In this document: positions 618-32,576 of the stretch, in pieces
Position numbering within the stretch: the first letter of the stretch is position 1
How the letters are laid out: every line of letters starts with the position of its first letter
Program-made: the position numbers and the translations under genes
NCBI GenBank assembly: GCA_002269645.1
Contig: NIVC01003397.1
Span: 1-64,000 of the forward strand
DNA: 64,000 nt
Reading direction: 5' to 3'
Source of the DNA: Macrostomum lignano
Taxonomy: Eukaryota
Notes under the pieces: generated by a model
The model's input: the letters and a program-made list of their open reading frames with translations, nothing else
What the model was told of the DNA's origin: nothing
The model's database searches: none

Positions 618-1098
618 AGTAGAAGGCATGAGGGGGCTTTTGGGACAAAATTTTTCACATCCTCCATAATCCATATTATCCATCCATATTATCCTTGACA
701 GAATCAGAAAAAAGGGGGGTCACACTCGCTCACAAAACCTCCTCCATAATCCCATTAAATTCATCCATATTATCCCCGACAGAATCAGAAAAAAAGGGGT
801 CGCACTTGCTTCGAAAACTTCGAACATAATCCCATTAAATCCATCCATATTATCCCTGAATCAGAGGGTCCTACTCGCTTACAAAACGTCATCCATAATC
901 CACCTAAATCCATCCATATTATCCCCGACAAAATCAGAGCATAACAGGTGTCCTACATAATCCACTGACATCACCCATAGCATCTTCGAAACAATCAGAA
1001 AATAATCTGCATTCTTCTCCCCACATTCAATCCGCAACGCGAAACCAGATCCCAAAGACTTTAAATAATCAGCGCAGGGTCCTTACCCTTTGAAAAAA
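618..1098 (+). repeat. Left terminal inverted repeat of Polinton with ~75-80 bp internal subrepeats
   Basis: agtagaaggcatgagggggcttttgggacaaaatttttcac... is the reverse complement of 31622-32049. Contains repeated ccataatcc..aaatccatccatattatcccc..cagaatcag units. Confidence 0.8.
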
Positions 1099-1811
1099 AA
1101 AATAAATAATAAAAAAAATTAAAAAAAAATTAAATTAAAAAAAAATTTCATATTTGATGTGAATCTTGCGAGGTAAAAAACAATAGCTAGCTGAGAAAAC
1201 TCATAAATAGAATAAATTTTTTTACATAAACAAAAACAAGAATAATTATTAATTGGTGGTACTTCTAAAATTGTCTACAAGTTGCTCTAAATTTATATTA
1301 GAACGAAGGTTATCTAACAAACCTACAGTATCCTCTCTACATATCCCACATTTTATCGTGTTATTACTTGAAGTAAGAATTTCTAGTCATATCACTTATA
1401 AGTAGGCTCTAAACAACTTGACGCTATTCTGGACTGTCTCGGAAAAACCACACATGATTTTCTCTGACGTGTTAGAAAAAATAATGTGCGCCCAGTACGT
1501 TCAAATATTCGTCTCCCCAGCTGGCCTTGGGTACCTCGGTTTCAGAGAAATCTCTCTCCATGCCAGTGTACGCTTTCTGTTACACTCCGCTATTTTTAAC
1601 ACACAACTTTGGCGACAACCTCCTCATGCCTTTCTTGCCTTGCCCCCCTCTAGTGGTATCTAGTGGTAAGTGGTATCTTGCCACTTCTCTCTACACTCTA
1701 TGAAAATATTAAAACTTATGAAATCTTAACACAACAAACAATAACCTAAAGGACTTGTCAATAAAATGTCTGAATAAATAAGATGTCTGATAAATATTAG
1801 AGTTGTTACTG

Positions 1812-3833: not shown

Positions 3834-4280
3834 ATGACAAAGATTGAAACCAGAACCATCAATAAACTCAATAAAATGATTGAATCAAAGAAACCAGGTC
3901 TTATATCAATTAAAGGTGTCAAAGTAAAAATCAATCCCGTGCAGCAAATAGTTCAGTGTAATGAGCAAAGACTCAGCATTACAGATGAAAAGTCAGGAGG
4001 AATCCTACCATTAGCAGCTCTTATCCCAATCATTGCAGGCGCTGTAAGTGCCGCAGGTGGTGTAGCTGGAGGTGTAGCAACTGCTGTTAAAGCTGGGAAT
4101 CATAGAGCCCACCAGCTAGAATTGCAAAAGATTGCAAGAGACAAAGGTATAACAATTAAGGCAGGAGAGGGCTGCCCCGATCGTGATGATTGTGATCATG
4201 AAAATTCTTTTAGCAAGTCTGACATTGTCAAAGCCATCATGACACTGCACAATGCTGGGTTTACAATAATGCGCATGTGA
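3834..4280 (+). CDS. Polinton small virion-type protein with adenovirus pX/mu-like hydrophobic segment
   Basis: Intact 148 aa. KSGG-ILPLAALIPIIAGAVSAAGGVAGGVATAVKA resembles the adenovirus pX C-terminus (GG-ILPLLIPLIAAAIGAVPGIA). Confidence 0.6.
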   Translation: MTKIETRTINKLNKMIESKKPGLISIKGVKVKINPVQQIVQCNEQRLSITDEKSGGILPLAALIPIIAGAVSAAGGVAGGVATAVKAGNHRAHQLELQKIARDKGITIKAGEGCPDRDDCDHENSFSKSDIVKAIMTLHNAGFTIMRM

Positions 4281-4403: not shown

Positions 4404-7400
4404 ATGCGAAAAGCCAATCCAGCAAAAGATTTAGTCAACAAATATTTTTCAAAAGGCGTCTCATTTCAAGACAAAAGTAATTTACTAAGAGAAGCATGTA
4501 AACAAAAGTTTAACACCGACCCTGGTCACCTGGGAAGCTATGAAAAACAGTTGGAAATCATCAATCAATTAGAATCCAACCAGTATGCGCCTATAAAAAA
4601 TCCTGCAAAGGAACACCAAGAGAGGAGTCGCAACTTAGTTAACAAATACGAAACTCTCACTGGCGAAAAAGCAAAGTACCCACAAAATAAGCAGGAACAA
4701 GAGAAATTAAAGCAATTAATCCATTTAAAAGAGTCGGAGCTTGCCATTGAAGAGATTAATTTTGCACAGAGGAAGTTTACAGAACATTACATAGAGTACA
4801 CAATCCCAATTAACAACACCAACCACATTAACGACACCAACGGCACCACCGCAAACATCTACGACTATAAAGACAGCATCCAATCAATTTTTGATCACAC
4901 ACTCAAAACACGCAAGACCTTTAAACTACAGATATCATTCAAGATTGCGTTTTATACGCCTGCAAAACTCACTGAACATCTCGAGTATTACATGACAACA
5001 AAGGCAAAGCCATTCACCCCTACAGACACACATGGATCCTTTCCTTCAAGATGTCACTAAGAAAATTGAAGCGTTTACATCCAGAGGTTCCGGATGGGTC
5101 GTGGGAGGGATTCAAAGAGCGACTGTTATGGTCATGAAATATGACCCACTTAAAGCCTCCTCTTATATAGAGCCCCCGCATAAGCTAGCCGGCAAAAAAG
5201 CTTGCATAAATGTTAAAAATAAGACAATTGCTGTGCTCTATGGGCAGTTCTTTCTGCACTTCTTCATGATAGTGTCCCTGACCACCCCGAAAGAACCTCA
5301 AATTATCAAAATTATTTCAACTACTATCTCATCGAATGCGAAAAGAAGGGAATCAGGTTTGACAAAGGAGGCTTGGCGATCTCTCAGATTCCAAAGCTAG
5401 AAGAAGTGTTTAATAACAAAATTAGAATCACAGTCTTTGAGTGGAGTGAAAAAAACTGAGAAAGTTCAACCGGTCAGATGTAGCAAAGACGTTTTAGATC
5501 CTGAGGGGAAAAGGCGGACTGAAGTGGATCTTCTAGTGATTGGTAATTTACTAGAGGAGGCTCACTATGTTTGGATTAAAATCATTCAAGACTCATTCAC
5601 AAGCAGTTGAATAATCATCACGAGGCTGTTGCCATCTGCCGCTTGTGCCTTAAGCATTACAGTGGACCTGAGCGCATTGAAAAACTAGCAGAGCATGAAT
5701 TATCATGTGAAGATCACCCAACTAACTGCTCTCTTCCTTCAGCTGAAGAGAAGTATCTCCGTTTTAAGAACTATCACAAGATGGAGAAGCTCCAATTTGT
5801 TGTATATGCTGATTTCGAATGCTCAATCATGCCAGAAACTCAATAACAAACTCAAACTCAAAAACATGTCCCCAATTCAGTAGCATATGCCTTTATAAAT
5901 ACAAAAGGACTTGTTGAGTCTAATTATTTCTTTGGAGAGCAGTGTGTGGAGCAGTTTATTGCCAGAATGTTAGAGTTGCAAAAATTGATTAGCACCCTTC
6001 AGCCTGTTTCGGGGGCGTAGCCCAGCGGTAGCGCAGCTGCTCTGGTGTGCCAGCGACTCAGGCTCGATTCCAAGTGCAGTCACATTAATTTGGGGCTGAA
6101 TTGGAATCTCGGCTTGGCTCTGCTCGTGCAATTAACGGCCTTGAGAGCCAACCCCCCAATGCGCAGTGAAGTGTACATGCCTAACGGTAAAATAAAGTTA
6201 GGGCCGCTGTACACTCCTGTGTGAGTGTGTGCCTGCGTACGTATCCGCGCGCTTAAATGCCTGCTCAAGGGAGTCGGCGGAATGGGCAGTAATGCCTCTC
6301 GCCGGTTGTGTGCCTAAGTCGCTTAAAGTGCGCCAGGGTGCACACAACCCCCCTGCCTCTAATAAAAAAAATTCAGCCTTTCCAATAATTATGTCTGAGG
6401 AGGATGAAAGCAATTTCCTATCAGCAACTCATTGCCACATCTGCAGGAAACAGTTAACTTGCACTGATATTAAAAACCCCACCGTTAGGGACCACTGCCA
6501 CTATACTGGGAAATTTAGAGGTGCAGCGCATAACACTTGTAATCTAAAGCTAAAATCGAACATTCATGATCTAACGATATTTTGTCACAACGCAAAGAAC
6601 TATGACATGCATTTAATAGTTGAAAAATCGGCATGATTCCAGACATACACCTTGATTGCATCGCAGAGAACAAGGAGAAGTTTAAGTGTGTTGATATTAA
6701 ACAGGATAATTCGGTTAAAGGTTCGAGTGAAGGTAAAATAAGACTGAAGGATTCATATCAATTTCTAGCTGCCAGTCTAGACGAACTAAGCAAGAATCTA
6801 AAAGATGAACAATGTACATGTACAAAGATATTTGCTAATAAAATTAACAACACTGATGAATCATTTAAACTTTTAAGAAAGAAAGGCTTCTACCCCTATG
6901 AAAATATTACTGGGTATCACGTATTTGAAGAAGGTTTACCACCACAAGAAAAGTTCTTTTCAAAGCTAACAGACTCTGGAATCTCTGACAAAGACTATGA
7001 GCACGCGAAGCATGTCTATAATTACTTTAATTGTCAAAACTTCTTCCAGTATCACCTGCTTTACCTCTACACAGATGTGTTTCTGCTGGCTGATGTGTTT
7101 GAAACCTTCCTTCAGATACACCTGGTACACAGCATATGGCCTTGATCCAGCACATTATGTGTCTCTGCCTGCTACTAGCTGGGAATCTTTGCTTAAAATG
7201 AAATGGGACCAAGATCCATATTGGTACATTGCAGAACTTCTTACAGACATTGACATGTACAATTTTGTCGCATCGTCAAAGCGAGGGGGGATCTCAATTT
7301 GCGTTAACAGGTATGCAAAGGCAAACAATCCCTACATTGAATCTTACAATAAGAAGCAGCCCTCAAACTACATAACTTACTTGGACGCTAATAATCTCTA

Positions 7401-8130
7401 CGGGTGGGCGATGAGTCAAGATCTTCCAGTTAGAGATTTTCGATGGCCAATTGTATCAGAATTCAAATGGGACTTTTCAATACCCGGCATTTGTGAGGTT
7501 GATGTTTACATTCCACCAGAGTTTCACGACTATATCTCTGACTTTCCACCCTTCCCAGAGAACATCAAGTGCCCGAAAATAATCGAAAATCCCAATGGAA
7601 CTTGGCACCTGTCAGGAACAGAAAAAGAACATACAGAGAAACTAACACAGAATCTAAACAACAAGACACGTTACAAAATTCATTACAAACTGCTTCAGTA
7701 TTTTATCTCACTTGGTTGCAGGGTCACCAAAGTTCACAGGGCTCTTAATTTACAGAGGAAGCGTGGATGAAACCCTACATTGATAAGAACACCCAGTTTA
7801 GGACCAAAGCAAACCAACGACTTTGACAAGAACCTCTTTAAGTTGGCCAACAACTCTGTCTATGGCAAGACTCTTGAGAATGAGCGGAAAAGAACAAACC
7901 TGAAACTTGGTTCCTCATCAGAGCCTGCTGTTATTCAGGCAAATATGTCAAAGCCAACATTCAAAGAACTCCATATCTTTAATAGCTACTTAGGTGTGAT
8001 CATATTTTACAAAACCAAGGTGACGCTGCGCAAGCCGATCTATACAGGTGTCACTGTTCTCGACGAATCAAAACGTCTGATGTACCAGTTCTTCAACTGG
8101 GTAAGTCAAAGCCCTGAGAATGGTATTTGA
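4404..8130 (+). pseudogene. Protein-primed family B DNA polymerase (pPolB), frameshifted, SINE-interrupted, truncated before motif C
   Basis: GSGW...YDPLKASSYI, VVYADFEC (ExoI), VRDHCHYTGKFRGAAHNTCN, CHNAKNYDMHLI (ExoII), LKDSYQFLAASLDEL, KGFYPYE, YTDVFLLADVFE (ExoIII), YLDANNLYGWAM (A), KLANNSVYGKT (B). No YxDTDS motif found. Confidence 0.92.
6006..6371 (+). mobile_element. tRNA-derived SINE inserted in pPolB
   Basis: A box TAGCCCAGCGG (6018), B box GGCTCGATTCC (6061), A-rich tail, 8-bp TSD TTCAGCCT (5998-6005 / 6372-6379). Removing it restores KLISTLQP-FPIIMSEEDE. Confidence 0.85.
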
Positions 8131-9599
8131 ACCATGCAGCGGTGTCGGAACATATTTCAAAGTGGGGGGGGCTATTGGTGGGAGGGCATATTGCACATAA
8201 TTTTTTTTAATCTAGGGCACCCTAACTCCTGCTGTTATGTCATTTTGTGACATTAATTGTTACAACCAGAGCAATATTCAATCATATCATATCAATTGTG
8301 TGAAAGTAAGCCAAAAGTCTAAAAATGCACGAATATTCAACTAATTAAAGCATTGCGCAACTGTACTGCACTATCAATTAATTTATTTAGTGAATATCTG
8401 AAATGAATGAAAATTATGTTCAGTTTTATGTTGTAGCCGTGCGCTCAAGTAGCAACGTGTAAATTATCAGAAGAAAGTAGCAGCAACGTTCTGGTCTATA
8501 CGTTTTTGTCTGCTATATTCCACAGCAATAATCTTATATAGATCTATATATCCATCTATCAATCCATTTATCTATTTATTTATTTATCTATCTATCCATC
8601 TATTTATCTGACTACTGAACCATCCAGAACTTCACTTCTTTAACTTTAATTTCAATCAATCACGAGTATCAGTCTTCCTCCACCCTACGGTACAATTTCC
8701 AAGAGTTGCGCAGCTCAACTCATGAGGTAGCTTGCTCGCTCACACTTAGTGTTACGTGTTGTCTAGAATCCATACCCTAGGCTACTTTCTCCATTCTGTG
8801 TATACTCTGTCTAAGAAATCTAAATTATGTGAATATCCTCAATCATAATTTGTGGGGATTCCTGATCAACAAACGCCAGTAAATATCAATAGTGCGAGCT
8901 AGCCCTTGAGTGTTGTCAATAGAGCTCCAAGCCAAACATTAGCTGCACAAAATTTTCAAAATGATTTTTTGGGGTTCCTGCTTCGCAACTAGCAACTAGC
9001 AACTAAAACTTTTTATTTGATTTTGACGGACCGGTTGCAGTTTAAGTTTGCAAATACAATCGCAGTTGATTATTACTGTTGAATATAACAGACAAACAAA
9101 CTTACCGACCAGTTTTGTTTATATTTGAAAAGCAGAACCCCCAAAAAAATTCTGATTCAGGATGAGGTCCGGTTTGAAGATGGGGCTTTTAGAGTGCAAA
9201 GTGTGCAAAGCTTTTTTGAAGCCTAAAAGCTTTGCACACTTTTGAGAGGTGCCTCGCACGCTCGTAGTTGGGGTTTCACACACTATTAGGAGGGGAATCG
9301 CACGCTTTTAAGACGCTCTTTGCACACCTTTGCACGAGATGACAAGGCTTACGTTGGAATCGCTATAATATTATCAATAGTAGGCTCACAGTGGAATCGC
9401 TTATAGATAGATATAAAAAGTTTTACTTTTAATTTTTTGAATAATGGCCATGACGCATTTAAACACTTATATTGTTATTTGCAGTATCGAAATGCATGCC
9501 ACTTTCAGCGATCCCCACAAAATTATATTGAGAATTGCGAGGCTGTTTAGAGTATAGAGACGGACATCAGATCGGTTCCAGCAGTGTTTTACAGTAAAA

Positions 9600-10342
9600 T
9601 TACACCGAATGACGAAGACCGAAAAGAAAAAACGAGTAGTCAATGGCAAAGGCGGGCAGTTCGAAAGAAAAAACATTCGAGCTTCGGGCAATGAGTATAG
9701 TCATCAAATGAAAAGAGAGGTAGCTAAATAATTTATACTGAGAGAACTTCAAAAGTAGCTGAGAGCAGCCGCAGGAGTGTATGTAGCTTAACAAATAAAA
9801 GCAGCATGATTCGCGATATAGGAATGACTGCGCAGTAGACAAGAAACTAGAGAGACAAAAGGAGAAATTCAGAATTTATAGCAGTTGAACAACAAAGATT
9901 TAGAGTGAAGTGAAAAATAGCCATTGATACAACTGCTTTAAGTATAAACTCACAAAGCAGACGGGATAGTCGGCACCATTGGAGTCGAGGTCGACAACGC
10001 TGCATCTTCTGGGCTACATGTCGCCGAGGGCCTTCTGTTTAAAATGAAGTCATGTATTATTGTCTTGGTTTAGACTCAAGTTCTCAAGTATCAAGTTTAG
10101 ATACAACTACACGCGCCATCATTCAACTAAATATTAATAAAATCAGCATGAATTAGGAAATTTTGTGTCGCCTTACATGTTCTCACTAAGCCGGCGAATC
10201 TTTGAAGGTGGCTGCCGATCCATGTCCTCGAAGTCCAGCTGCTCTGCTTCAAAGTCACATGGCCGCTTCATTTCTTCTCTGGTGCTTTTAAAACTATTTT
10301 CTTTGGAGCAGTACTCTCGTAGCTCTTCGATGAAAGCTGAAA
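9600..10342 (-). other. Possible spliced gene fragment of unknown identity
   Basis: Canonical acceptor/donor pairs flank ~10342-10176 (FIEELREYCSKE...KIRRLSEN) and ~10037-9955. No recognisable domain. Confidence 0.25.
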
Positions 10343-10696
10343 GTGAACAGAATTAGAAAAAATGTTAGTTAAAAATTACAGTACAGCATTGTTGTTTGGC
10401 AGTAAAAGTCGCATAACTTAGCCTATCTTTCCTAAAGAGTTTGAAGAGCCTTTTTGAACCAAAGAGAAATAGAAGGGAAGTAATAAGATCTTAGGTCTAC
10501 ATAGTTATAAGAACAACTATAAGAGTACACTCTAGAAATGAGATTGTAGGAGAGATTGTAGGAGTATAGCTATAATTTGAATAGAAATGAAATGAAGCAG
10601 AAAAGTAATAATTAATCGTATATAGATGCAAATATTGAACATGCAAAAAGCAAAATGAAACAACATTCGTAAAAAAATTAGTAATAAATAGTAATG

Positions 10697-11497
10697 TGTC
10701 ACGATTATTGATGTAGCGGCTAGCTATGGCTATGACCCTTAAAAGGGCCGTTTGACGAGAGTTGCAGAAGGTCGTAGTTCCAAAATAAATTGAAGTCAAC
10801 TCTTGCAAAGCGGATCGTGTAGCGGAGCACTTGGCGATAAAGGCAGGAAACTGCCGTAGTTGTTTTTATTGTTGAGATCAATATTAGAAGTGGTTATTAC
10901 TGTCAATACACAAACTATAGCTTTCTGGGCACTGGCGGCTGCAACAATGGTTTTTGAAGATAATTAGAATATGAAGTCAAGTGGCAGACGAATGATGCGA
11001 TGGCGACGCAACGTGATGAGCAATGGCGATGAGCACGGTGAAGGCAGTGAGTAGCAGTAGGCAGGCAGGTGAGAAGTGGCGAGATTGGCGTTAGCCATGG
11101 CGGAACACAGTGAAGTAACAGTGTGAACAGGCTGGCCCAGACAGAGGGGCCGTGGCGAGAGATAAGGAGGCAGGACGAGACAAGAGCCAGAACAAGGCAG
11201 GACAGGAAAGTGGAGGCCCCCAGCCCGCCAGGCGAGGGTTAATAAAGGAGCGCAGAGGGGGGCGTAGCGCGAAGCACGAGCGGTTCTCATTGGCTGGCTA
11301 AAGAACTTAAAATTATCGATCGTGCCAGTTTTCTACGGTCGCATGAAAGGATAGCAAAGTACGCAGTGAATTAGCGATAGGTACAGATTCATTGGGCACT
11401 ACTACAAGTAAACGTTAAAATAAACGATTGGAGAAATTTTAGAGAAGCTGCAGTCCAACGGCCCTTTTCGGGACCACTTTAAACTGGCAACGTCACA
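10697..11497 (-). mobile_element. Solo LTR (family shared with 37983-38709)
   Basis: TGTCACG...CGTCACA ends, 4-bp TSD AATG, CCAAT then TATA-like motif on the minus strand, clear homology to the second copy. Confidence 0.8.
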
Positions 11498-12572
11498 AAT
11501 GTTTAATAATTAGTAATGAGCTTACTGAGTAGTGGACGAGAGAATAAATGGCACCTAATAAATTACAACTATAAATAATGGAATACAAATATGAAATCGA
11601 AATTAGTCGAAAAGTACAAAGTCACAACATCACAACAAGTAAATAAATGAAAGTTAAGCACACGATGAAAGTAATAATTACTTGATTATAAAATTAAGTA
11701 ATGAATGGACTTAAGTAATGAGTGGTAATAAATATGCATTATTATGCACAACAACGAGTAGTGGACGAGTAAATTGGCACCTAATAAATTACTTAAAACT
11801 ATAAATGGAATACAAATAGAATTAGTAAACATGCAAAAAAGATGAAGTAAAAAATGAAAATTAAAAACATTGTCTTTAGACCTATAATGTCATATATTGT
11901 CATTCAATCATTTCTTTTGCGAAGTCGCGACCATTGGGATTTCCATCTATTGATATTAATTTGCATTGTCATGCTGTCAGCAACTTCGGCCTTGTCCACA
12001 AACCGCAAGGACTAATGTGTCGCGACGTACTGATTGTACGCGCTCTTGCTTGGTGGGATCGGGCAGTTGCTACTCGGACCATTAAGACGCAGCAGCTCAT
12101 CAACAACTGCACTGATTTTCAAGCCGTTGGCTGTCTGCATGCGTCGCTTTGACTCAGTGCGCTTCTCTGCTGCTGTTAACACTCTAGGAGTGTTGACTTC
12201 ATGGTGAACGGACGCATTGGCTCGATAGGCCTCCTGGCTAATGATTTGGTTCATCTCATTGTAACCATTGTATGCCTGGGTAACCATTCCTGGGTTGCCT
12301 GGGTTCGTCCATTGTCGTAGGGGAATTTATTGTACTGATACTCGGCTGTTTTGCTGACTGCTGAGTGTTCACTGGTGTCGAGAACAGCGCGTTTGCAGTT
12401 TCCACAGACGCCTCCGCGATGGGTGCGAGATTCCTCCTTGAATAAGAAGAATTGTAGTGGCGAGAGGTAAAGAACAAGTGCAACCAATGTAAAATGCTGT
12501 TGCCCACGTCGATAGCATCTTCCGCTTTCCGTTAGCTGTCGTCTTCATAGTTTTGGATGCCGTACTGGTCGT

Positions 12573-12852
12573 CCTCAGCTGCCGACTCATCATGATCGTC
12601 GTCCAGTCTGGGGCCATGCCTTCTAGGACGAATGCTGTCATCGTCATCATCCTCCTCATGGTCGTCCTGGTCGTCATCAGCTGCCGACTCATCATGATCG
12701 TCGTCCAGTCTGGGGCCATGCTTTCTAGGACGAATGCTGTCATCGTCATCATCCTCCTCATGGTCGTCCTGGTCGTCATCAGCTGCCGACTCATCATGAT
12801 CGTCGTCCAGTCTGGGGCCATGCCTTCTAGGACGAATGCTGTCATCGTCATC
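12573..12852 (-). repeat. 102-bp tandem repeat (~2.7 copies) encoding an acidic 34-aa unit
   Basis: Identical positions at 12637/12739/12841. Minus frame reads DDDDSIRPRRHGPRLDDDHDESAADDDQDDHEE. Confidence 0.85.
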
Positions 12853-13032
12853 GTCAAGTTTCGAGCTCCGGTTGTTGTCAGGCAGCGGTAGTTAGGATGT
12901 GGTAGTGCGAATATCTGTCTCCCTCAAAAATATCTTGGGGAATTGGATAGTGTCCATTTGGAGAATTCCTTTTTTAACCATCTCTAACAATAAAAATGAA
13001 AACTCTGTCTGCGTGTGTCTGTCTGTGGACAA

Positions 13033-13079
13033 GGGTTAGGGTTAGGGTTAGGGTTAGGGTTAGGGTTAGGGTTAGGGTT
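13033..13079 (+). repeat. Interstitial telomere-type (TTAGGG)7 array
   Basis: Direct reading. Confidence 0.95.
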
Positions 13080-13269
13080 TCTTCCATACTTTCTCTCTCC
13101 TGATCCTTTTCCACCCTTTCCCTCAGCCACTCCCGACCCCATCTTTTTCTCCTCTGCGCTCCCATTCGCTCACTGTACCCCTCGCGCGCTCCCATTGGCA
13201 GTAACCTCCTCTCAGTTTTTATATTTATTAAATATACCTGATCCAACTTAGGACTCTTTACTAACTAAT

Positions 13270-13308
13270 TGCTCCTGAAGAAGGTTTTAAACCGAAACGC
13301 GTCGAGCA
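13270..13308 (+). ncRNA. Minimal type I hammerhead ribozyme (Penelope pLTR-type)
   Basis: TGCTC-CTGAAGA-A-GGTT-TTA-AACC-GAAAC-GC-GTC-GAGCA: stem I TGCTC/GAGCA, intact core, palindromic stem III ACGCGT, GUC cleavage triplet. Confidence 0.8.
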
Positions 13309-13396
13309 CCAAATCCCTTTTTAGCTACTGTCTTTTTAGCCTTCCTTATTTTAAGTGCTCAGCGGCCGACTGGTCTGACGGATCAGTAATCCTTGT

Positions 13397-13443
13397 CCTA
13401 ACCCTAACCCTAACCCTAACCCTAACCCTAACCCTAACCCTAA
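13397..13443 (-). repeat. Interstitial (CCCTAA)7 array facing the 13033 array
   Basis: Direct reading. Confidence 0.95.
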
Positions 13444-13460
13444 AATTTACTGACATTTGT

Positions 13461-14273
13461 TTAATGAAAAAAATAAAGTAAAATTCTTTTCTCCTTATTA
13501 ATCATGACAAACTGATAGGGTTGGTTCCACTTTTCATAGCATATGTTAACAAATTCCTCCTGTGAAATTGTTCTGTCAGAGTTCTTAGCTAGATATGTAA
13601 TGTGAGCTGGGGCAATGACCTCATTATAAAATCGTTTCAGTCGATCCTGTGGTATGGTTGGGAAAAGGAGAATCAAATTACAGTTACCTCTAATTGTTTT
13701 ATTTGGCAGTTCAAACCAGTTTTGGGCAATGTAAATAACATTGCAGTTATTGTGTCTACCCCGGGTGAAATAATTTTCTATCTGTTTCTGGGGACCGGTC
13801 ATGCAGTCATTAAAGACAATCAGGTGCTTTCTCCCCTTTTCCAGTTCATCAGGTTGAGGTAAGAGTTTAGTTTTAGGATCTATCTGTGGATCTCCATAAG
13901 TGAAAACTTTAATGTTTTGCCACTTTTCATTGTCTGGGATGTGTTTTGCGTATTCAGTGGCTACAACTTCCGGGTTGCTGTTGAGGTCTTTTTGATGTCT
14001 AAAACATTGAATAATATCTTCCTTGTTGAGTTTGTTCTGTAGGCCCGCTACTAGCATTTTATACTCATCTTGATACAGAGTGGGTGAATAGATATGTAGT
14101 GTGTCATAATCGAGGAATCCAGGTCTGAGGAGCATGTTAAAAACTCTGAAGGTTTTCCCTGACCCAGATGAGCCAACAACAATGCATCGGAAGTGCCCTG
14201 GAATTATCTCGTTGTAAGCAAATTTTATCTGATTGCGTGTCCAGTGGGGATGAAAGTCGTTTGTGAAGTCCAT
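13461..14273 (-). CDS. Polinton A32/FtsK-like DNA packaging ATPase
   Basis: Walker A GSSGSGKT, Walker B LIVFND (first Asp is Asn), FTRGRHNNCNVIYIAQ arginine-finger motif; 270 aa open. Confidence 0.92.
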   Translation of the reverse strand: MDFTNDFHPHWTRNQIKFAYNEIIPGHFRCIVVGSSGSGKTFRVFNMLLRPGFLDYDTLHIYSPTLYQDEYKMLVAGLQNKLNKEDIIQCFRHQKDLNSNPEVVATEYAKHIPDNEKWQNIKVFTYGDPQIDPKTKLLPQPDELEKGRKHLIVFNDCMTGPQKQIENYFTRGRHNNCNVIYIAQNWFELPNKTIRGNCNLILLFPTIPQDRLKRFYNEVIAPAHITYLAKNSDRTISQEEFVNICYEKWNQPYQFVMINKEKRILLYFFH

Positions 14274-16168: not shown

Positions 16169-17455
16169 ATGAACGATCTCCTGACACCGGTTTTCGATAA
16201 GATTAACAAGCCTATTTTAAGTGATGACAGCACTATTAAAGCGACTCAGGTAAGAGTTCCCAGTCAGGAAAATCAGAATGAAACTAATTTTGGTCCTGGT
16301 CAAACACTGACATTCACATACAATGGATGTTCGTCTCTGGTTAGTGTGCACAGTCTTAAGAGCGGCTTCAATATGACATTTCAATTCAAGACAAAAGGTG
16401 GAGATGATGCTGCTCATGCTAACGTTGACAAGCATGACGCGGATGTGGCTCTGATCAGTAACTTTTGGGCGTACATGTTCAAGGAGTTTAGTGTATCGAA
16501 TGGGAGCACAGAGTTGGAGCGAATCGCCAACTTTGGAATTGTCTATGACGCTCATCGTTTGATGGAGAATCCGGATTTTATTCAGTTGGGAAGTGGTGCA
16601 GGTTTTATTGCAGATCAAAAAGAAGGAGACACCAATGACAGTGGCTATAAAAAGAGGAAGAAGAGATACAACTATGCTTTGCAAGGTGCTAATGATGCTG
16701 CTAAGAACCCGCTGTATCGGTCTGTTGATGTATTTGTACCACTAAGATTCATGAGTGGATTCTGTAATACATTTAATCGACTGACTAGTAACTTTAGCTA
16801 CACCTTTAAGATGACTAGAGATGATCGCAGTAGAGTGTTGTGGACTGGGGCGGACCACACTAGGATGGATGTGAAGCTAACCGGAATCGAGTTGTATTTG
16901 GAAGTCATTGAGCCAAAGACTGCACTAAAAGCAGACTATCTTAAGGCAATAGAGAAGGACATTGATGTTGCATACACGGCCTACATGTGTCGAGATGAGC
17001 GAAACGAAACTAGAACAAACATCTGCATCAAAGAGGGATCATGCAGCAATCCAAGGTATATCATTATTAACATGAGAAACCTAAATAGCATTATACGCTA
17101 CATGCATGGAGACTTTCGGTCCATTCAGCATGAAATCAGTGATAATCTTTACCCTGCACTGCCAAAAAATGGTGATTTCAGTCAGAACAAGATTAGCAAA
17201 TTTTACAGCGAGTTGGTCGACTTGGCCGTGAAAGAGAACAATGGAAGTGCTATCACTGCTCTTCAATATGGAACTCTATATCCGATGTTTGGCGCTGATG
17301 TGTCTGCCAGACAAATTCCTACTGATAACAGCCCTGTGAATATCGTGACTAACATTGAAAGGACTGCCGCAACAGCCGTGGACCTGTACATTGTCTATGC
17401 ATTTGAGAGGAAGGTGAAGCTTAACATGATCAACAATTCATCCAGTAAAGTTTGA
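16169..17455 (+). CDS. Polinton major capsid protein (double jelly-roll)
   Basis: Intact 428 aa, DDS-type N-terminus, LYPMFGADVS...DLYIVYAFERKVKL C-terminus; lies beside the penton and ATPase genes. Confidence 0.8.
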   Translation: MNDLLTPVFDKINKPILSDDSTIKATQVRVPSQENQNETNFGPGQTLTFTYNGCSSLVSVHSLKSGFNMTFQFKTKGGDDAAHANVDKHDADVALISNFWAYMFKEFSVSNGSTELERIANFGIVYDAHRLMENPDFIQLGSGAGFIADQKEGDTNDSGYKKRKKRYNYALQGANDAAKNPLYRSVDVFVPLRFMSGFCNTFNRLTSNFSYTFKMTRDDRSRVLWTGADHTRMDVKLTGIELYLEVIEPKTALKADYLKAIEKDIDVAYTAYMCRDERNETRTNICIKEGSCSNPRYIIINMRNLNSIIRYMHGDFRSIQHEISDNLYPALPKNGDFSQNKISKFYSELVDLAVKENNGSAITALQYGTLYPMFGADVSARQIPTDNSPVNIVTNIERTAATAVDLYIVYAFERKVKLNMINNSSSKV

Positions 17456-17474: not shown

Positions 17475-18338
17475 ATGGAGGCCATAGCCGAAAGACTAAA
17501 CAACATTGTTTCACACTCTAAGGAGAGCATTCCTATTACAATAACCGGGCGAATTAATGACTCAAACGGGATATTTGTTGAAAAATTAGAGCAGGCGATT
17601 CGCCTGGATCCAGGTGCTAATTACCATGTCTATCTTAACGACTTCACTGGTTAGTCAAACGTTCCCAATGTGATGGCAGCAAATAATAAGTTTCATTACA
17701 AATGGAAACGAGCAGCAGCAGATCCTGTGGCATTCCCTGTGAGCACGCAAAGTGTGGATACCTACAATTACTTTCTAGAAAACGTCTTTACTAAAAGAGG
17801 CCATTTTGAGACACCTGATGCGAGTAAGCCAGAGAAGAAACTATTCCCTGTCAAACTAACCTATGATCTCACTGTAATGAGAGTGGTCATGCAAGTTCAC
17901 AAAGATGCGGAGGTTGAGTTTAAAGATGACACTTGGTATAGGGAATTGGGATTCGAGAAGAAAGTTTATAAGGCTGAATCCACAGCGTGGACCGCCCTTC
18001 AAGCGTCGGGGGCCGTTAGCATGGCCCGGGAAAATGTAAGCGGTTTTTTCTTAGCACCCAATATTGCAGATATTGTAAAGGGTTTAAATATTCTAATCAG
18101 AAGTAATCTTAGTCTTGATTGGGTATTTAAGGGAAAGCGAACGAATATTTTGTACAACATCTCCAACTCTGTAGCTGGAGGACAGATGGTGGTAGAGAAA
18201 CCAAATTCGGTGAAAAGAGTTGTATTGAGTAATAAGGAGATTCACGAGATTGTGCTACAGTTTGAGACTGAAGATGGGTTGGGTGTTGATTTCAACGCTG
18301 AAGAGTTTGTACTGACGTTGATCATTGAGAGAATGTGA
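17475..18338 (+). pseudogene. Polinton minor capsid (penton) protein with one TGG>TAG nonsense at 17652
   Basis: IRLDPGANYHVYLNDFTG*SNVPNVMAANNKFHY and NILYNI...VEKP...IHEIVLQFETEDGLGVDFNAEEFVLTL; same frame across the stop. Confidence 0.8.
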
Positions 18339-18976: not shown

Positions 18977-20285
18977 TAAGTGGCGTTGCTTTTTTGCTTA
19001 AGTTTTTATTAAGTAAAGACGTTCTCTGACTGTTTTTACCCTGGTTGCCTCTCTGGTAGCTTGTCTAAGGGTTGTGCGCAATCCGATTGGCTATGCCAAT
19101 TTCTAAGGGTCCGCCCCGGAGGGGCTGTGCCCGTTCTAAAAATAAACCTATTTTTTCTCTCTATATCCAATTTCGGCCCTCGGCCCTGGTTTAGGGGGGG
19201 TGGTGCCCGGAGTGAGTTGTCTCTCTGGACTGCAGTGTGGCTAGGTCGGGACTTGAGCCCCCCGGTCGTACCCGCCCTGCAGGAAAGCATGACCAATTCA
19301 CAAAGGTGTACGGTAGACCCAGTAGACTGCCAGCCCTGAGGCTGAGCACCCGGGCTGCAGGTCGGCAAGCTGCCTGCTTTAGGGCTATGGTGCTCCTCCT
19401 TCTGCCAATCTTTTTTTCTGGGCTGGCATCCCAGCGCTGTTTTATCCCTTAGCTTTGTGCCTTTGTGGCTTTTATTATTTTATTCTTTTATCTGGCCACT
19501 AGAAGCCTTCCAATCTTCGGAGTTATGAGCTCTGCCCTTGCCCGGTCCATCTTGCCCTGTCCTCGGGTCCATCTCCTGGCTCCTGCTGCAAGGTCCCTGC
19601 TTGCGTGTCTCTGGCTCTCATCCTGACAGTGGATTGGTGTCCTGGGAAGGATGTTCGTCCCGAACGGGGACAACCGGCTGAGTCCGGAGTCCTCTTGCCC
19701 TGGGTGCCTCTCTCCCGACCCCTTGGCCTGGCCTCCAATATTGAGCTGGATAGGCGATGCCCTTGGGTTGGTAGCAATAGAGGTGTGTATGTCCGCCTAG
19801 AGTCTCCCCCTCGGATACAAGCCTTCCAGACTCACTCCAAAATAGAGCTGGGTAGCGAAAAGCCTTGAGGCTCGAGACCTACAGTTTATGCGGTTGCTGT
19901 ATAGGATCGCTCTTGGTAAATAGCTGCCCAGACTCTCTCCAATAGTTAGCCCTTTTCCAAGACTTCTGGGTTTCCCCGCTCTTGGACGGCTTTTTCAGTA
20001 ATTCCAATTCTGTTATTTCGCGCACTCCCAAGGACTTGTCTGCTGGGGGTGGCCTGGGTGGACTCGGTCCTAGCACCGTCCCTGATTCCACTGTTGGTTT
20101 GGCGGTGTCTTGTACCGTAGGTTTGGGTCTAACTCGCCCCCCCCGCGCTTTGAGCCGGGTCCAATCCAATTGCATCCATGGGGTATCTCGGGCCCTGGAC
20201 AGATAATGCCTTGGCCCCTGGAAGTGCCCCTCGCGGCAGAGCCCACCCCAGGGCTGATCCGCGGGTCCCCTAGGACCCTTTCGTT
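18977..20285 (-). mobile_element. Degenerate retroelement-like fragment (target of the Gypsy insertion; continues 29241-29275)
   Basis: FQGP...WTRLK resembles an integrase C-terminal GPF/Y tail. Direct repeat AAGTGGCGTTGCTTTTT at 18977 and 29252. Confidence 0.35.
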
Positions 20286-21148
20286 TGATGTGTTCCTTAT
20301 TACCCGACTTTCGATAATCAAGGAACAATCACTTCTAGCTCAACAGCTAGGCAACCCAGTAAGTCAAACGAAGGTATTCAATTACCTTTAATCCGGATTT
20401 GAATTTCTTGAGTAGTTCTCGCTAGGAACTCGTCAGTAGATCTCGTAGATCAGGCGCCTTGATTCTTCAGTTGCTCTGGTCCTGGTTCCTCTTGTACTTC
20501 CGATAAGTTCTTCCGGCCGGTATCTTCCGTCAGGACCAATCAGAGGCCTCGTAGCAACAATGGGTACCCTGCGCCAAAACTGCGGTCTAAATTAAGCCTC
20601 CTTCTTCTAGCAGTGCCTCTATGCACTCTAGGTATAGCTCCGGAAACCACTGATAGTCCTCTAAGATCTATCAGGGGCAGTCCTTCTGGAGACTGCAACC
20701 AATGGAGTCTAAACAGACTCAAGAGTCTCAACAGACTCAAATGGACTCAAGTCTCAATAGACTTGAGCGAGACGTCTCTAACACAACAGGCGCAAATAAG
20801 GAAGGCTTACCGCAACAACTCGACCGAGTCTCGATTGACTTGGTGATCAGGAAGTCCTCCTAAGGCTTCCTCTTCGGAGCGCTCCTCTTCCGTGGGGAGA
20901 ATGGCTCCGGTACCGCTTCAGATCGCTTGTATTTATAGGCAACTTTTTGCTCCAAAATAGTATCATGACAATTCACGTGTTGCGCTAAAAGGGGAAAATG
21001 GCTCATGGCGTATTATTCTGGTAACATCTTTTCTGGTAGCGTGATTCATTCAAAGCTTAGGCGCACATGCGTATACTTACTTACTTATAGTAGTATTATA
21101 CGATTATCTTCTTTTTTTCTGTTTTTGCGGGAGGCAGAACACTCTACA
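20286..21148 (-). repeat. 3' LTR
   Basis: TGTAGAG...CACATCA on the minus strand, TATAAA at ~20935, preceded by the PPT. Confidence 0.95.
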
Positions 21149-21151
21149 AAA

Positions 21152-21163
21152 TCTCCCTTTTTT
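21152..21163 (-). promoter_or_regulatory. Polypurine tract
   Basis: AAAAAAGGGAGA just before the 3' LTR. Confidence 0.8.
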
Positions 21164-21275
21164 ACGAAAAACTCGTCCCGAGTTTTAACAATAAAATAAT
21201 AAAATTCTGTGGTGATCAGTTAATATAGGAAATAAACAATTGATTTTGTGCGCGTCTAGAGAAGCGAGGGATTGG

Positions 21276-21710
21276 TCAAAGCTCTAAAAACTTTTCAGTA
21301 CATATTGCGGTCAAAACTCGAATATCGCGTAGACATCGAGTGGCATCAGGTTTGATACGACACCACTTTCGAAACGTGCAGTCTCGCGGCATACTATTAC
21401 TTAAGGGGCATCCTATAATGCCCCTACTAGCGGTTTGCTTCAAACCGTGCATGCAAATAAAATGTTGGTGGTTACAATATTGAAACGTGCGCCAAGAATA
21501 ACAATAGGCGCATTGTCGCAAACTATCTCTACAGAGGGGACAATTCTGCCATGGCTGAATATAATGTGAATCGCTTAAACATTGTCCGCAAACGTTTTGT
21601 CCGTTGATGCAAATAATCGGTGGCTTGACAGCCAAGTCATCAGTTAAACATATCGGGCAGTCATATAGCTGCTGAGGTTGGGGTGCCTGTTTTGACAGTG
21701 CGTTGCCCAT
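21276..21710 (-). CDS. Accessory N-myristoylated SINA/Siah-like RING protein
   Basis: MGNALS (MGxxxS); CPICL...PPIICINGQNVCGQC...CPLCR; a second Cys/His cluster; located between IN and the PPT. Confidence 0.7.
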   Translation of the reverse strand: MGNALSKQAPQPQQLYDCPICLTDDLAVKPPIICINGQNVCGQCLSDSHYIQPWQNCPLCRDSLRQCAYCYSWRTFQYCNHQHFICMHGLKQTASRGIIGCPLSNSMPRDCTFRKWCRIKPDATRCLRDIRVLTAICTEKFLEL

Positions 21711-21830
21711 AATTGTCGTCAATTTGTCGCTGTTTTTGTGTCGCTCGGATTAGTCGCCTTTTACGACAAGCTTGCGAAGCTGTAGTGCTATTCTTTATCC
21801 CGGTCACTACACGGGGTTGTTCTCGAAACT

Positions 21831-28357: not shown

Positions 28358-28375
28358 GAGAGGGCGAGATCACCA
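28358..28375 (-). promoter_or_regulatory. Primer-binding site
   Basis: TGGTGATCTCGCCC.. begins 2 nt after the 5' LTR; the tRNA was not identified. Confidence 0.7.
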
Positions 28376-28377
28376 AT

Positions 28378-31224: not shown

Positions 31225-31621
31225 CTATTAGCTACTAGAAATAAAAGATGGGTACATGTACTTGCCTACACACATTCAAAGAAAGTTGACTTCAGAATGC
31301 AAAGATAACCATAAATCATAAAGCCAGTAACATTTGTTTTCTTGAAAGACATCATACTAGTCATTTCGTGCATTTAAAAGCCATTAAATCTATTAAATAA
31401 AGACGGTAAAGTTTCGGTAAATTTTGACGTCAAAACAACGTCACAGATCTAGGTCAAAATTACGTAAAAAACATCGACAGAATTGACGTCATTTCAACGT
31501 CACACTTTGACCTATTTTCAACGTCAGTTTGACGTCGCGCAACGTCACTTTGCTACATGGGGTGCTTTGTAATAGGAACCTGGAGAGACAACTGGAAACA
31601 TTTTTAGAGAAAATTTAGTTT

Positions 31622-32049
31622 TTTTTCAAAAAGTGAGGACCCTGCGCTGATGATTTAAAGTCTTTGGGATATGGTTTCGCCGCTTTGGATTGAATGTGGG
31701 CCCCATGGGGAGAAGGATGCAGATTCTTTTCTGATTGTTTCTGGGTGGATGTCAGTGGATTATGTCAGTGTCAGTGAGCATAACAGGTGTTAGTGGACAT
31801 CTGTTATGCTCACTGATTCTGTCGGGGATAGATTTAATGGGATTATGGAGGGGGTTTTATGGGCGAGTAGGACCCCATTTTTTTCTTCAGGGATAATATG
31901 GATGGATTTAGGTGGATTATGGAGGATGTTTTGTGAGCGAGTGCGGCCCCCCTATTTTCTGATTCTGTTGGGGATAATATAGATGGATTTAGGTGGATTA
32001 TGGAGGAGGTGAAAAATTTTGTCCCAAAAGCCCCCTCATGACATCTACT
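31622..32049 (-). repeat. Right Polinton terminal inverted repeat
   Basis: Reverse complement of 618-1098 with differing subrepeat number; ends TCTACT. Confidence 0.8.
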
Positions 32050-32547: not shown

Positions 32548-32576
32548 CAGATTTCTTAATTTAAGAAATTAAGACT

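What the first reader, a model, noticed from the sequence alone, without database searches (positions are those of the whole stretch)
12981..13443. Hammerhead ribozyme cassette bracketed by inward-facing telomere repeats inside the Polinton
Seen: (TTAGGG)7 at 13033, ~320 bp containing a CCATTGG/AT-rich box and an intact-looking minimal hammerhead (13270-13308), then (CCCTAA)7 at 13397. Both arrays have 7 full units and both abut the variant GGACAAGG, but on opposite sides. Upstream, A|TCTCTAACAATAAAAATG..GTCTGTCTGT (12981) looks like a Helitron 5' end. Established: minimal type I hammerheads typify Penelope pLTRs and retrozymes, and EN-deficient PLEs (Athena/Coprina) associate with telomeric repeats. 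Inference: either a small telomere-repeat-primed non-autonomous retrozyme-like element, or a healed end-to-end fusion with pLTR filler. The orientation is fusion-like, not minichromosome-like.
Basis: partly seen in the sequence, partly recalled or inferred. Interest (0 to 1): 0.7.

Follow-up and report, generated by a model that had tools for sequence, protein, structure and literature searches.

The report
Hammerhead fragment between inverted telomere repeats
Inside a decayed Polinton sits what looks like a scar of chromosome-break repair: telomere repeats added to both broken ends, and about 310 bp copied from a retroelement-like RNA that carries a Penelope-type hammerhead ribozyme and a telomere-complementary tail.

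Summary
There is a perfect 48-nt TTAGGG run at 13032-13079 and a perfect 47-nt CCCTAA run at 13397-13443. They are the only such arrays in the window. They face inward around a unique 311-bp core.

The core carries one complete type I hammerhead core at 13270-13308. It scores far below Rfam's threshold. It does show all three hallmarks of Penelope-like-element (PLE) minimal hammerheads, and about 0.01 such motifs are expected per 64 kb.

On the hammerhead strand, two degenerate units and the C-strand array follow 81-88 nt downstream. That is the 3'-end layout of endonuclease-deficient, telomere-attaching PLEs (Athena, Coprina, Terminons).

No reverse transcriptase lies within 5 kb. No second copy exists in the window, and none was found in the searchable collections.

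The site lies within about 30 nt of the natural end of the Polinton ATPase gene. The polymerase gene has lost its C-terminal part there.

Best reading, confidence 0.45: RNA-templated double-strand-break repair. This parallels vertebrate TERC-ITS loci, three of which also have head-to-head arrays.

Rivals are host telomerase RNA as the template, an inverted interstitial array, a small mobile unit, and misassembly. The Helitron idea fails.

The parts
618..1100 (.). Left terminal inverted repeat of the Polinton (context)
   Evidence: Pairs with 31619-32049: 72% over 497 nt, with sub-blocks up to 91%.
6229..8130 (+). Polinton protein-primed DNA polymerase B gene, broken. It has two frameshifts and one in-frame stop, and its C-terminal part is missing.
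   Evidence: Pfam DNA_pol_B_2 and Endonuclease_7 hits on ORF pieces. No polymerase motif C occurs in any frame of the window.
8131..13026 (.). About 4.9 kb with no recognisable Polinton gene, between the polymerase remnant and the cassette
   Evidence: No Pfam domain in any of six frames. No ORF of 120 aa or more except a repeat-encoded one. The stretch 10895-11499 is 74-79% identical to 38123-38711, outside the Polinton.
13027..13034 (+). GGACAAGG, the exact reverse complement of 13391-13398. It abuts the left array on its outer side.
13032..13079 (+). Left array with the G-strand on +. Perfect 48-nt run; (TTAGGG)7 at 13036-13077.
13080..13390 (+). Unique 311-bp core, pyrimidine-rich on + in its 5' half. 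Read as a cDNA copy of the 3' part of a hammerhead-bearing RNA.
   Evidence: No other copy in the window. No significant fold on either strand: z = -0.97 and -1.64. No hit in 4 viral, 1 metagenome and 2 prokaryote-genome scans.
13192..13236 (+). CCATTGG box (13192-13198) and AT-rich, TATA-like box (13216-13236). These are sequence motifs only; their function was not tested.
   Evidence: A 14-nt direct repeat, GCGCTCCCATT(C/G)GC, is at 13156 and 13186.
13270..13308 (+). Minimal type I hammerhead. Helix I is 13270-13274 with 13304-13308. CUGAAGA is 13275-13281. The extra A is 13282. Helix II is 13283-13293. GAAA is 13294-13297. The palindrome CGCG is 13298-13301. U16.1 is 13302 and C17 is 13303. 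The predicted cut lies between 13303 and 13304.
   Evidence: The hallmarks are those listed in PMC4209133.
13390..13401 (+). Two degenerate C-strand units, TCCTTG (3/6) and TCCTAA (5/6). They contain CCTTGTCC (13391-13398) and form the junction between the core and the tail.
13397..13443 (+). Right array, C-strand on + (G-strand on -). Perfect 47-nt run; (CCCTAA)7 at 13402-13443. It forms the telomere-complementary tail of the hammerhead strand.
13461..14273 (-). Polinton A32-like packaging ATPase, with an intact ORF. Its stop codon lies 18 nt from the right array.
   Evidence: Pfam Pox_A32. There are 30 homologues, the best at 76% identity. Relatives stop 4 codons earlier and are followed at once by other genes.
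31619..32049 (.). Right terminal inverted repeat of the Polinton (context)

Best explanation
The cassette is a scar of RNA-templated repair of one double-strand break inside a Polinton that was decaying or was damaged by the same event.

Shown:
- Two perfect telomeric arrays of 47-48 nt each have their G-strand running 5' to 3' towards the middle. This is the geometry expected if both 3' ends of one break were extended.
- The 311 bp between them carries a PLE-type minimal hammerhead.
- On the hammerhead strand, two degenerate units and then (CCCTAA)7 follow.

Inferred:
- On the ATPase side, the 3' end a few bases past the ATPase gene received TTAGGG repeats.
- An RNA whose 3' end is complementary to those repeats then annealed. 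That RNA resembles the 3' module of telomere-attaching, endonuclease-deficient Penelope-like elements.
- It was reverse transcribed through ACAAGG and 311 nt of its body.
- On the other side, the 3' end ...GG was extended by the same six template-adjacent bases (ACAAGG) and then by repeats.
- The two ends were then joined.

The fragment is a dead, 5'-truncated piece. Its hammerhead lacks a partner copy, so it is not expected to cut.
For: 1. The arrays are real, unique in the window and inward-facing.
2. The hammerhead core is complete and is the only descriptor hit in the window. I found 0.01 per 64 kb in shuffles and none in 58 kb of other loci.
3. It has the three features that Cervera and de la Pena report as descriptor-independent hallmarks of PLE minimal hammerheads: a nucleotide between A9 and G10.1, a G10.1-C11.1 pair, and palindromic 15.2-16.2 (PMC4209133; sequence).
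4. A hammerhead followed on the same strand by reverse-complement telomeric repeats is the described 3' end of Athena, Coprina and Terminon elements (PMC6431247; PMC8557442).
5. The junction from core to tail decays gradually (unit matches 6, 5, 3, 4, 2 of 6). The junction from tail to Polinton is abrupt, as expected for priming on newly added repeats.
6. There is a precedent. At vertebrate TERC-ITS loci, repeats plus an adjacent RNA fragment were retrotranscribed into breaks. Three of 41 loci have head-to-head arrays, ascribed to a second enzyme acting on the other end. One has a template-adjacent fragment followed by repeats (PMC8537989).
7. The site is a rearrangement point. The polymerase gene lacks its C-terminal part. 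About 4.9 kb there has no Polinton homology. Relatives carry other genes immediately after the ATPase gene.
8. The shared ACAAGG in register next to both arrays is explained if both ends were extended from the same template.
Against: - No reverse transcriptase or GIY-YIG domain lies within 5 kb in any frame.
- No second copy of the core was found anywhere I could search, so membership of a repeat family is unproven.
- The Rfam score is 14.2 bits against a gathering score of 34.
- The spacer between hammerhead and tail is 81-88 nt, not 'immediately downstream' as in Terminons.
- The canonical model for telomere-attached PLEs predicts repeats in the same orientation on both sides, not inverted.
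- The near-equal array lengths (48 and 47 nt) are a coincidence under independent telomerase additions.
- The host, its telomere repeat and its telomerase RNA are unknown.
- The 4.9-kb block on the left is unexplained.
Confidence: 0.45

Rival explanations
1. The repair mechanism is the same, but the copied RNA is the host's own telomerase RNA, making this a TERC-ITS in the strict sense. Telomerase added repeats to both ends. On one end it read past its template boundary for 6 nt (ACAAGG) and then realigned. On the other end it read through for 311 nt. The hammerhead-like motif would be fortuitous.
For: - One enzyme and one RNA explain the ACAAGG next to both arrays.
- The type B and type C TERC-ITS geometries, and head-to-head arrays, are documented.
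- A 4-bp hairpin, GGAU-CAGUA-AUCC at 13380-13392, sits 4 nt before the first CCUAAC. This is where animal telomerase RNAs carry the P1.1 boundary stem (PMC8480181; sequence).
- A CCAAT-like and a TATA-like box lie upstream. Animal telomerase RNA genes have TATA boxes.
Against: - Published examples of animal telomerase RNAs place the template near the 5' end, behind P1.1 (in apple snail P1.1 lies at about nt 11-32). A 311-nt leader would be much longer than that.
- Promoter-like boxes inside a cDNA make no sense.
- Published TERC fragments are 25-98 bp long.
- No Rfam telomerase RNA family hits the region at E up to 10.
- The hammerhead would have to arise by chance, at roughly 5e-5 for 311 bp under my descriptor.
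Confidence: 0.07
2. An ordinary interstitial telomeric array of about 16 units, with two variant units in the middle, was inserted next to the ATPase gene. Half of it, plus 311 bp of neighbouring DNA, was later inverted between the 8-bp inverted repeats GGACAAGG and CCTTGTCC. The hammerhead belongs to an unrelated PLE remnant or arose by chance.
For: - Inverting 13027-13398 restores one in-register array, (CCCTAA)7 CCCTTG TCCTAA (CCCTAA)7, derived.
- An 8-bp inverted repeat at both ends of the segment is what an inversion by template switching leaves behind.
- Short interstitial arrays inserted at breaks are common in vertebrates.
Against: - It needs two events.
- The variant units would sit exactly in the middle (7 + 7 units) by coincidence.
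- Before the inversion, the hammerhead strand would be preceded by G-strand repeats, so the match to the PLE 3' layout would be an accident.
- Eight base pairs is very short for recombination.
Confidence: 0.13
3. The whole 417-bp unit (13027-13443) is a small non-autonomous mobile element. It would have telomeric inverted ends, an internal promoter and a hammerhead, and would be mobilised in trans by a PLE reverse transcriptase. Transcripts of either strand would end in a C-rich telomere complement.
For: - CCAAT-like and TATA-like boxes lie 35-80 nt upstream of the hammerhead.
- The arrays are perfect and equal in length.
- Non-autonomous hammerhead elements are known in animals (PMC7229834).
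Against: - There is no second copy in 64 kb, which contains many other transposable elements, and none in any collection scanned.
- There is no target-site duplication.
- The ends are not true inverted repeats, because the 8-mer lies outside one array and inside the other.
- There is no tandem arrangement and no stable fold.
Confidence: 0.1
4. Assembly artefact: two telomere-containing sequences were wrongly joined.
For: - Inverted telomeric arrays are a classic signature of chimeric joins.
- The left flank shows no homology to the Polinton.
Against: - There are no Ns, and the centre is unique and non-palindromic.
- Both flanks fall inside one pair of Polinton inverted repeats, with genes in a coherent order.
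- The shared ACAAGG in register is not what a random join gives.
Confidence: 0.08
5. A Helitron starts at 12981.
For: A|TC is present at 12980/12981.
Against: - There is no CTRR-T 3' end with a preceding hairpin. The right array ends CTAA followed by A.
- No Rep/helicase domain is found in 8.1-13.1 kb in six frames.
- TC after A occurs by chance about once in 64 bases.
Confidence: 0.01

Closest known systems
3'-terminal module of endonuclease-deficient Penelope-like elements (Athena, Coprina, Terminons)
   Same: [quoted passage not shown] Copies are 5'-truncated (PMC6431247, PMC8557442).
   Different: - Here the spacer is 81-88 nt rather than immediate.
- No RT gene is present.
- The site is internal, inside a Polinton, not terminal.
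- The second array is inverted rather than direct.
- The repeat is TTAGGG in an animal that is not a rotifer. Described animal cases are the rotifer Athena and Terminon elements; a kuruma shrimp EN-deficient element is called Coprina in one paper and Neptune-like in another.
TERC-ITS loci of vertebrates (Nergadze 2007; Sola et al. 2021, PMC8537989)
   Same: - Telomeric repeats plus an RNA fragment adjacent to a telomere-complementary tract were retrotranscribed into a double-strand break in one step.
- Three of 41 loci have head-to-head arrays.
- One has a template-adjacent fragment followed by repeats, like ACAAGG followed by the array here.
   Different: - Their RNA is telomerase RNA and their fragments are 25-98 bp.
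- Here the fragment is 311 bp, carries a hammerhead and matches no telomerase RNA family.
- No empty orthologous site is available.
PLE minimal hammerheads in pseudo-LTRs (Cervera and de la Pena 2014, PMC4209133)
   Same: The catalytic core is present, with an extra nucleotide between 9 and 10.1, a G10.1-C11.1 pair and a small palindromic helix III that implies action as a dimer.
   Different: There is a single copy with no partner, and no PLE ORF or second terminal repeat nearby.
Metazoan non-LTR retrozymes (Cervera and de la Pena 2020, PMC7229834)
   Same: The unit is small (about 300 bp), low in GC and carries a type I hammerhead, in an animal genome.
   Different: Retrozymes are tandem repeats with canonical hammerheads and strongly self-paired RNAs. 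None of these features holds here.
Twin priming of LINE-1 insertions (Ostertag and Kazazian 2001; from my own knowledge)
   Same: Both 3' ends of one break serve as primers, which gives inverted structures.
   Different: L1 uses its own endonuclease and a poly(A) tail. Here priming would be through telomeric repeats, and only one side carries a long cDNA.
Telomere-bearing transposons of ciliates (TBE1, Tel-1; from my own knowledge)
   Same: Telomeric repeats occur at both ends of an internal unit, in inverted orientation.
   Different: Their repeats face outward, like a minichromosome, and flank a DNA transposon with a transposase. Here the repeats face inward.

Membership tests
Hammerhead ribozyme type I (Rfam RF00163) | Conserved core CUGANGA ... 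GAAA ... UH, with helix I closed by the two ends | tested here: met
   Full-length alignment to model positions 1-45 at 13269-13309. Helix I has 5 bp and helix II has 4 bp.
Hammerhead ribozyme type I (Rfam RF00163) | Score at or above the curated gathering threshold | tested here: not met
   14.2 bits against 34; E = 0.59 on 101 nt. No match at gathering level in the window.
Hammerhead ribozyme type I (Rfam RF00163) | Self-cleavage after position 17 | not testable with these tools
   The predicted cut lies between 13303 and 13304. Helix III has no loop, so a monomer cannot form it.
PLE minimal hammerhead (PMC4209133) | Extra nucleotide between A9 and G10.1; G10.1-C11.1 pair; palindromic 15.2-16.2 | tested here: met
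   A at 13282; G at 13283 paired with C at 13293; CGCG at 13298-13301.
PLE minimal hammerhead (PMC4209133) | Located in a terminal repeat that flanks a PLE RT (with or without GIY-YIG) ORF, with a second hammerhead copy for dimer formation | tested here: not met
   No RT or GIY-YIG in six frames of 8100-13100. Of the window's other large ORFs, 28 were scanned against Pfam; their RTs are Gypsy-type or LINE-type. There is only one hammerhead in the window.
Endonuclease-deficient telomere-attaching PLE (Athena/Coprina/Terminon) | Hammerhead followed on the same strand by reverse-complement telomeric repeats at the 3' end | tested here: met
   Hammerhead at 13270-13308, C-strand units from 13390 and a perfect run at 13397-13443. 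The 81-88-nt spacer differs from the 'immediately downstream' layout.
Endonuclease-deficient telomere-attaching PLE (Athena/Coprina/Terminon) | RT ORF lacking an endonuclease; phylogenetic placement of that RT | tested here: not met
   No RT is present. At best this is a 5'-truncated 3' fragment.
Endonuclease-deficient telomere-attaching PLE (Athena/Coprina/Terminon) | Position at a chromosome end, with the 5' truncation capped by repeats in the same orientation | tested here: not met
   The site is internal to a Polinton, and the 5' array is inverted.
Metazoan non-LTR retrozyme | Tandem repeats of 150-450 bp, each with a canonical hammerhead, and a strongly self-paired RNA | tested here: not met
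   No tandem repeat in the core. One hammerhead. Fold z-score of -0.97.
TERC-ITS | Telomeric array adjoining a fragment retrotranscribed from the RNA next to a telomere-complementary tract | tested here: met
   On the - strand: (TTAGGG)7 TTAGGA CAAGGA, then the antisense of the core. This is the type B geometry.
TERC-ITS | The fragment matches the host telomerase RNA | not testable with these tools
   The host genome and its telomerase RNA are not available. No Rfam telomerase RNA hit at E up to 10.
TERC-ITS | An orthologous empty site shows a one-step insertion | not testable with these tools
   The closest relatives are metagenome contigs with 65-76% ATPase identity and a different gene order.
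Helitron | 5' TC and 3' CTRR with a subterminal hairpin, inserted between A and T; RepHel gene in autonomous copies | tested here: not met
   Only A|TC at 12980/12981 fits. No 3' end fits and no Rep/helicase domain is present.
Head-to-head telomere fusion site | Two arrays that abut directly, with flanks that are two different subtelomeres | tested here: not met
   The arrays are 317 bp apart (13080-13396). Both flanks lie in one Polinton delimited by its inverted repeats.

The most novel reading that the evidence does not exclude
Both arrays and the shared ACAAGG were copied from the element's own RNA tail by a telomerase-like PLE reverse transcriptase acting on both 3' ends of one internal break. 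This would be twin priming with telomerase-like realignment on the tail. It would explain why the arrays are perfect and nearly equal (48 and 47 nt): each would be a near full-length copy of one tail of about 47 nt. It would show a retroelement RT, sister to TERT, healing internal breaks in an animal with TTAGGG-type repeats. It would also imply an undescribed family of telomere-attaching PLEs in a non-rotifer animal.
Probability: 0.12. Interest if true: 0.75.

Novelty: new variant of a known kind. Interest (0 to 1): 0.45.

Why it matters
If the reading is right, this locus records a retroelement RNA being used to patch a chromosome break. That RNA had a hammerhead and a telomere-complementary tail.

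This links two literatures that have been separate. One is telomere-attaching Penelope-like elements, known in animals from rotifers and, at most, one shrimp element. The other is telomerase-RNA-templated break repair, known from vertebrates.

It would also point to an undescribed telomere-targeting PLE family in an animal whose genome shows TTAGGG repeats.

As it stands, this is one locus without comparative support. Its value is as a search seed, not as a result.

Tried and rejected
Searches for other copies:
- BLAST of 12950-13500 against the window found only the two arrays matching each other.
- Four viral-contig scans found nothing.
- Two prokaryote-genome scans found nothing.
- One metagenome scan with the core-tail junction gave 4 loci. 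All were unrelated GC-rich sequences matching by chance.
- A phmmer search of 1.84 billion representatives with the translated core gave only a low-complexity protein.

Identifying the host:
- Exact look-ups of the window's ATPase, capsid and gag-pol proteins found nothing on record.
- The gag-pol protein has no close homologue.
- A CAPS-like ORF is about 48% identical to its best-scoring bilaterian homologues (insect, fish, snail, tapeworm). This only says 'an animal, not close to any sampled one'.

Finding an empty site:
- The ATPase relatives have a different gene order, so no alignable flank exists.

Looking for a reverse transcriptase beside the cassette:
- None in six frames.

Looking for a stable RNA fold of the core or of 13230-13400:
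- Not significant.

Other points:
- The 7-nt inverted repeat TCAGTAA/TTACTGA around the right array looked suggestive. Seven-mer inverted repeats are not enriched in this region, however: 8 observed against 9.6 expected.
- A hairpin or foldback copy and a simple terminal-inverted-repeat transposon were both rejected, because the 8-mer lies outside one array and inside the other.
[quoted passage not shown] 2017) are not held in the library. Their content is cited through later papers.
Full report
WHAT IS THERE

The window holds exactly two telomeric arrays. On the + strand the layout reads as follows.
- GGACAAGG at 13027-13034, G at 13035, (TTAGGG)7 at 13036-13077, TT at 13078-13079.
- A unique 311-bp core at 13080-13390.
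- CCTTGTCC at 13391-13398, overlapping a 5/6 unit TCCTAA at 13396-13401, then (CCCTAA)7 at 13402-13443.

The perfect runs are 48 nt and 47 nt long. No shuffle of the window produced a single three-unit match. The core has no other copy in the window.

The 8-mer and its reverse complement each lie on the 5' side, on the + strand, of an array. In the TTAGGG frame both are in register. The + strand reads TGTGGA CAAGGG followed by the array. The - strand reads the array followed by TTAGGA CAAGGA TTACTG. Short inverted repeats are not enriched here overall. Exact adjacency of an 8-mer pair to both arrays has a chance of 4^-8 per registration, so some process ties the two arrays together.

THE HAMMERHEAD

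The segment 13270-13308 aligns over the whole Rfam Hammerhead_1 model. It scores only 14.2 bits against a gathering score of 34. Nothing in the window reaches any Rfam gathering score.

The motif is nevertheless complete.
- Helix I is UGCUC paired with GAGCA.
- The core is CUGAAGA, followed by an extra A.
- Helix II runs G10.1 to C11.1, with 4 bp and a triloop.
- GAAA follows, then the loopless palindrome CGCG between A15.1 and U16.1, then C17.

A descriptor I wrote finds it as the only hit in the window. The same descriptor gives 0.01 hits per 64 kb in 300 Markov shuffles and none in 58 kb of unrelated fetched loci.

Three features of the motif were not demanded by that descriptor: the nucleotide between 9 and 10.1, the G10.1-C11.1 pair and the palindromic 15.2-16.2. 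These are the traits Cervera and de la Pena list as recurring in PLE minimal hammerheads beyond their own descriptor (PMC4209133). Those ribozymes are thought to act as dimers and cut poorly in vitro. A lone copy such as this one is not expected to be active.

CONTEXT

The cassette lies inside a Polinton. Its inverted repeats are at 618-1100 and 31619-32049. Mapping a related element (L009) and Pfam hits gives these genes.
- Integrase at 2792-3796 (+).
- A PLA2-like gene at 2396-2677 (-).
- An adenoviral Px-like gene at 3834-4268 (+).
- Polymerase B at 6229-8130 (+).
- ATPase at 13461-14273 (-).
- Major capsid protein at 16169-17455 (+).
- A penton-like gene at 17475-18335 (+).

An LTR retrotransposon with identical LTRs is nested at about 20285-28676.

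The polymerase gene is broken by two frameshifts and one in-frame stop. It also lacks its C-terminal part, and no motif C exists in any frame of the window.

Between the polymerase remnant and the cassette lie about 4.9 kb (8131-13026) with no Pfam domain in six frames. One stretch of that block is repeated outside the Polinton.

The ATPase ORF is intact. Its relatives stop four codons earlier and are followed within 5-50 nt by other genes that the window lacks. The right array therefore starts within about 30 nt of the natural end of the ATPase gene, at a point where the Polinton has been rearranged. No relative carries telomeric repeats.

WHAT IT RESEMBLES

Two bodies of work bear on this.

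The first concerns endonuclease-deficient PLEs (Athena, Coprina, Terminons). [quoted passage not shown] The hammerhead strand here is followed by two degenerate C-strand units and a perfect C-strand run. That is the same layout, except for a spacer of 81-88 nt.

The second concerns vertebrate TERC-ITS loci. They show that telomeric repeats and an adjoining piece of a telomere-complementary RNA can be retrotranscribed into a double-strand break in one step. Three of 41 loci carry head-to-head arrays, which the authors ascribe to a second enzyme acting on the other side of the break. In the Xenopus locus a template-adjacent fragment is followed by repeats (PMC8537989).

MOST LIKELY HISTORY

Only the anatomy is shown. 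The history below is inferred.
1. A break occurred just past the ATPase gene.
2. Its - strand 3' end (...GTCAGTAAATT) received TTAGGG repeats. The abrupt junction fits de novo addition.
3. An RNA ending in UCCUUG-UCCUAA-(CCCUAA)n paired with these repeats. It was copied through ACAAGG and 311 nt of body, giving the gradually decaying junction.
4. The other end (...TGTGG) was extended by the same ACAAGG and then by repeats, as in the Xenopus-type organisation.
5. The two ends were ligated at 13079/13080.

Inward-facing arrays are exactly what extension of both 3' ends of one break produces. I put this reading at 0.45.

WHAT DOES NOT FIT

- There is no RT and no second copy.
- The Rfam score is sub-threshold.
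- The spacer separates the hammerhead from the tail.
- The equal array lengths are unexplained under independent additions.
- The 4.9-kb block is unexplained.
- The CCAAT-like and TATA-like boxes at 13192-13236 are sequence motifs only.

RIVALS

(a) The RNA was the host telomerase RNA (0.07).
- For: it explains ACAAGG most simply, and a 4-bp hairpin at 13380-13392 sits where a P1.1 boundary stem would be.
- Against: where positions are given for animal telomerase RNAs, the template lies near the 5' end; published fragments are 25-98 bp; no telomerase RNA family hits; and the hammerhead would be a chance motif.

(b) A 16-unit interstitial array was later half-inverted between the 8-bp repeats (0.13).
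- For: it restores a single in-register array.
- Against: it needs two events, the variant units would lie dead centre by chance, and the PLE-like layout becomes an accident.

(c) It is a self-contained non-autonomous element (0.10). There is no other copy, no target duplication, and the ends are not true inverted repeats.

(d) It is a misassembly (0.08). The centre is unique, there are no Ns, and both flanks lie within one Polinton.

(e) It is a Helitron (0.01). Only A|TC fits.

NOVELTY AND SCORE

Each ingredient is known: PLE minimal hammerheads, the hammerhead-plus-telomere-complement module, RNA-templated break repair, and head-to-head interstitial arrays. What seems undescribed is the combination. 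A PLE-like RNA, rather than telomerase RNA, appears to have been used as the patch. The host is an animal that shows TTAGGG repeats and is not a rotifer, and the site is inside a Polinton. I file it as a new variant of a known kind.

The host is a metazoan roughly equidistant from the bilaterians that gave the best hits. It could not be identified further.

Interest is 0.45: a good seed for a genome-wide search, not yet a finding. The most novel reading not excluded is that a telomerase-like PLE RT copied its own tail onto both ends of the break. That would account for the two near-identical array lengths. I give it a probability of 0.12.

Noticed in passing
window 12561-12852: A 102-bp tandem repeat, 2.9 copies at 97% identity, lies just left of the cassette. 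On the - strand it encodes an acidic 34-aa repeat with no Pfam family above threshold.
   Followed up: partly
window 12990-12995 and 13455-13460: AATAAA on the + strand lies about 35 nt before the left array. ATTAAA on the - strand lies directly after the ATPase stop codon, about 12 nt before the right array. The cassette therefore sits between two convergent poly(A)-signal-like motifs.
   Followed up: no
window 13248-13254 / 13395-13401 and 13383-13389 / 13447-13453: TTAGGAC in the core is complementary to GTCCTAA at the start of the tail. TCAGTAA and TTACTGA flank the right array. Neither pair exceeds the number of 7-nt inverted repeats expected by chance in this region.
   Followed up: yes
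window 20285-28676: An LTR retrotransposon is nested in the Polinton. Its LTR segments of at least 300 bp are 100% identical, which suggests a recent insertion. It carries Ty3/Gypsy-type gag, RT, RNase H and integrase domains.
   Followed up: partly
window 32030-32586 and 35808-36241: A satellite built on TGCTATGAGATTAT (periods 14, 22, 36) lies on both sides of a LINE-like pair of ORFs: an endonuclease fragment at 33323-33835 and an RT at 33832-35796. A perfect 17-bp x 6 repeat is at 32577-32678. All of this is directly outside the right Polinton inverted repeat.
   Followed up: no
window 10895-11499 and 38123-38711: A GC-rich segment of about 600 bp is present both inside the unexplained 4.9-kb block and outside the Polinton, at 74-79% identity.
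   Followed up: partly
window 39269-39966: A 259-nt inverted repeat, 98% complementary, with a 180-nt spacer (foldback or MITE-like). A second one is at 57609-58182.
   Followed up: no
It is 44-48% identical to its best-scoring homologues from insects, fish, molluscs and flatworms.
   Followed up: partly
L007 236-538 and L006 (metagenome contigs): These are unrelated contigs from a GC-rich eukaryote, found by chance. They end in a (CCCTAA)n run and also carry an inward-facing pair of degenerate telomere-like arrays about 140 bp apart (measured on L007). Head-to-head telomere-like arrays with a short filler therefore occur in other organisms too.
   Followed up: partly
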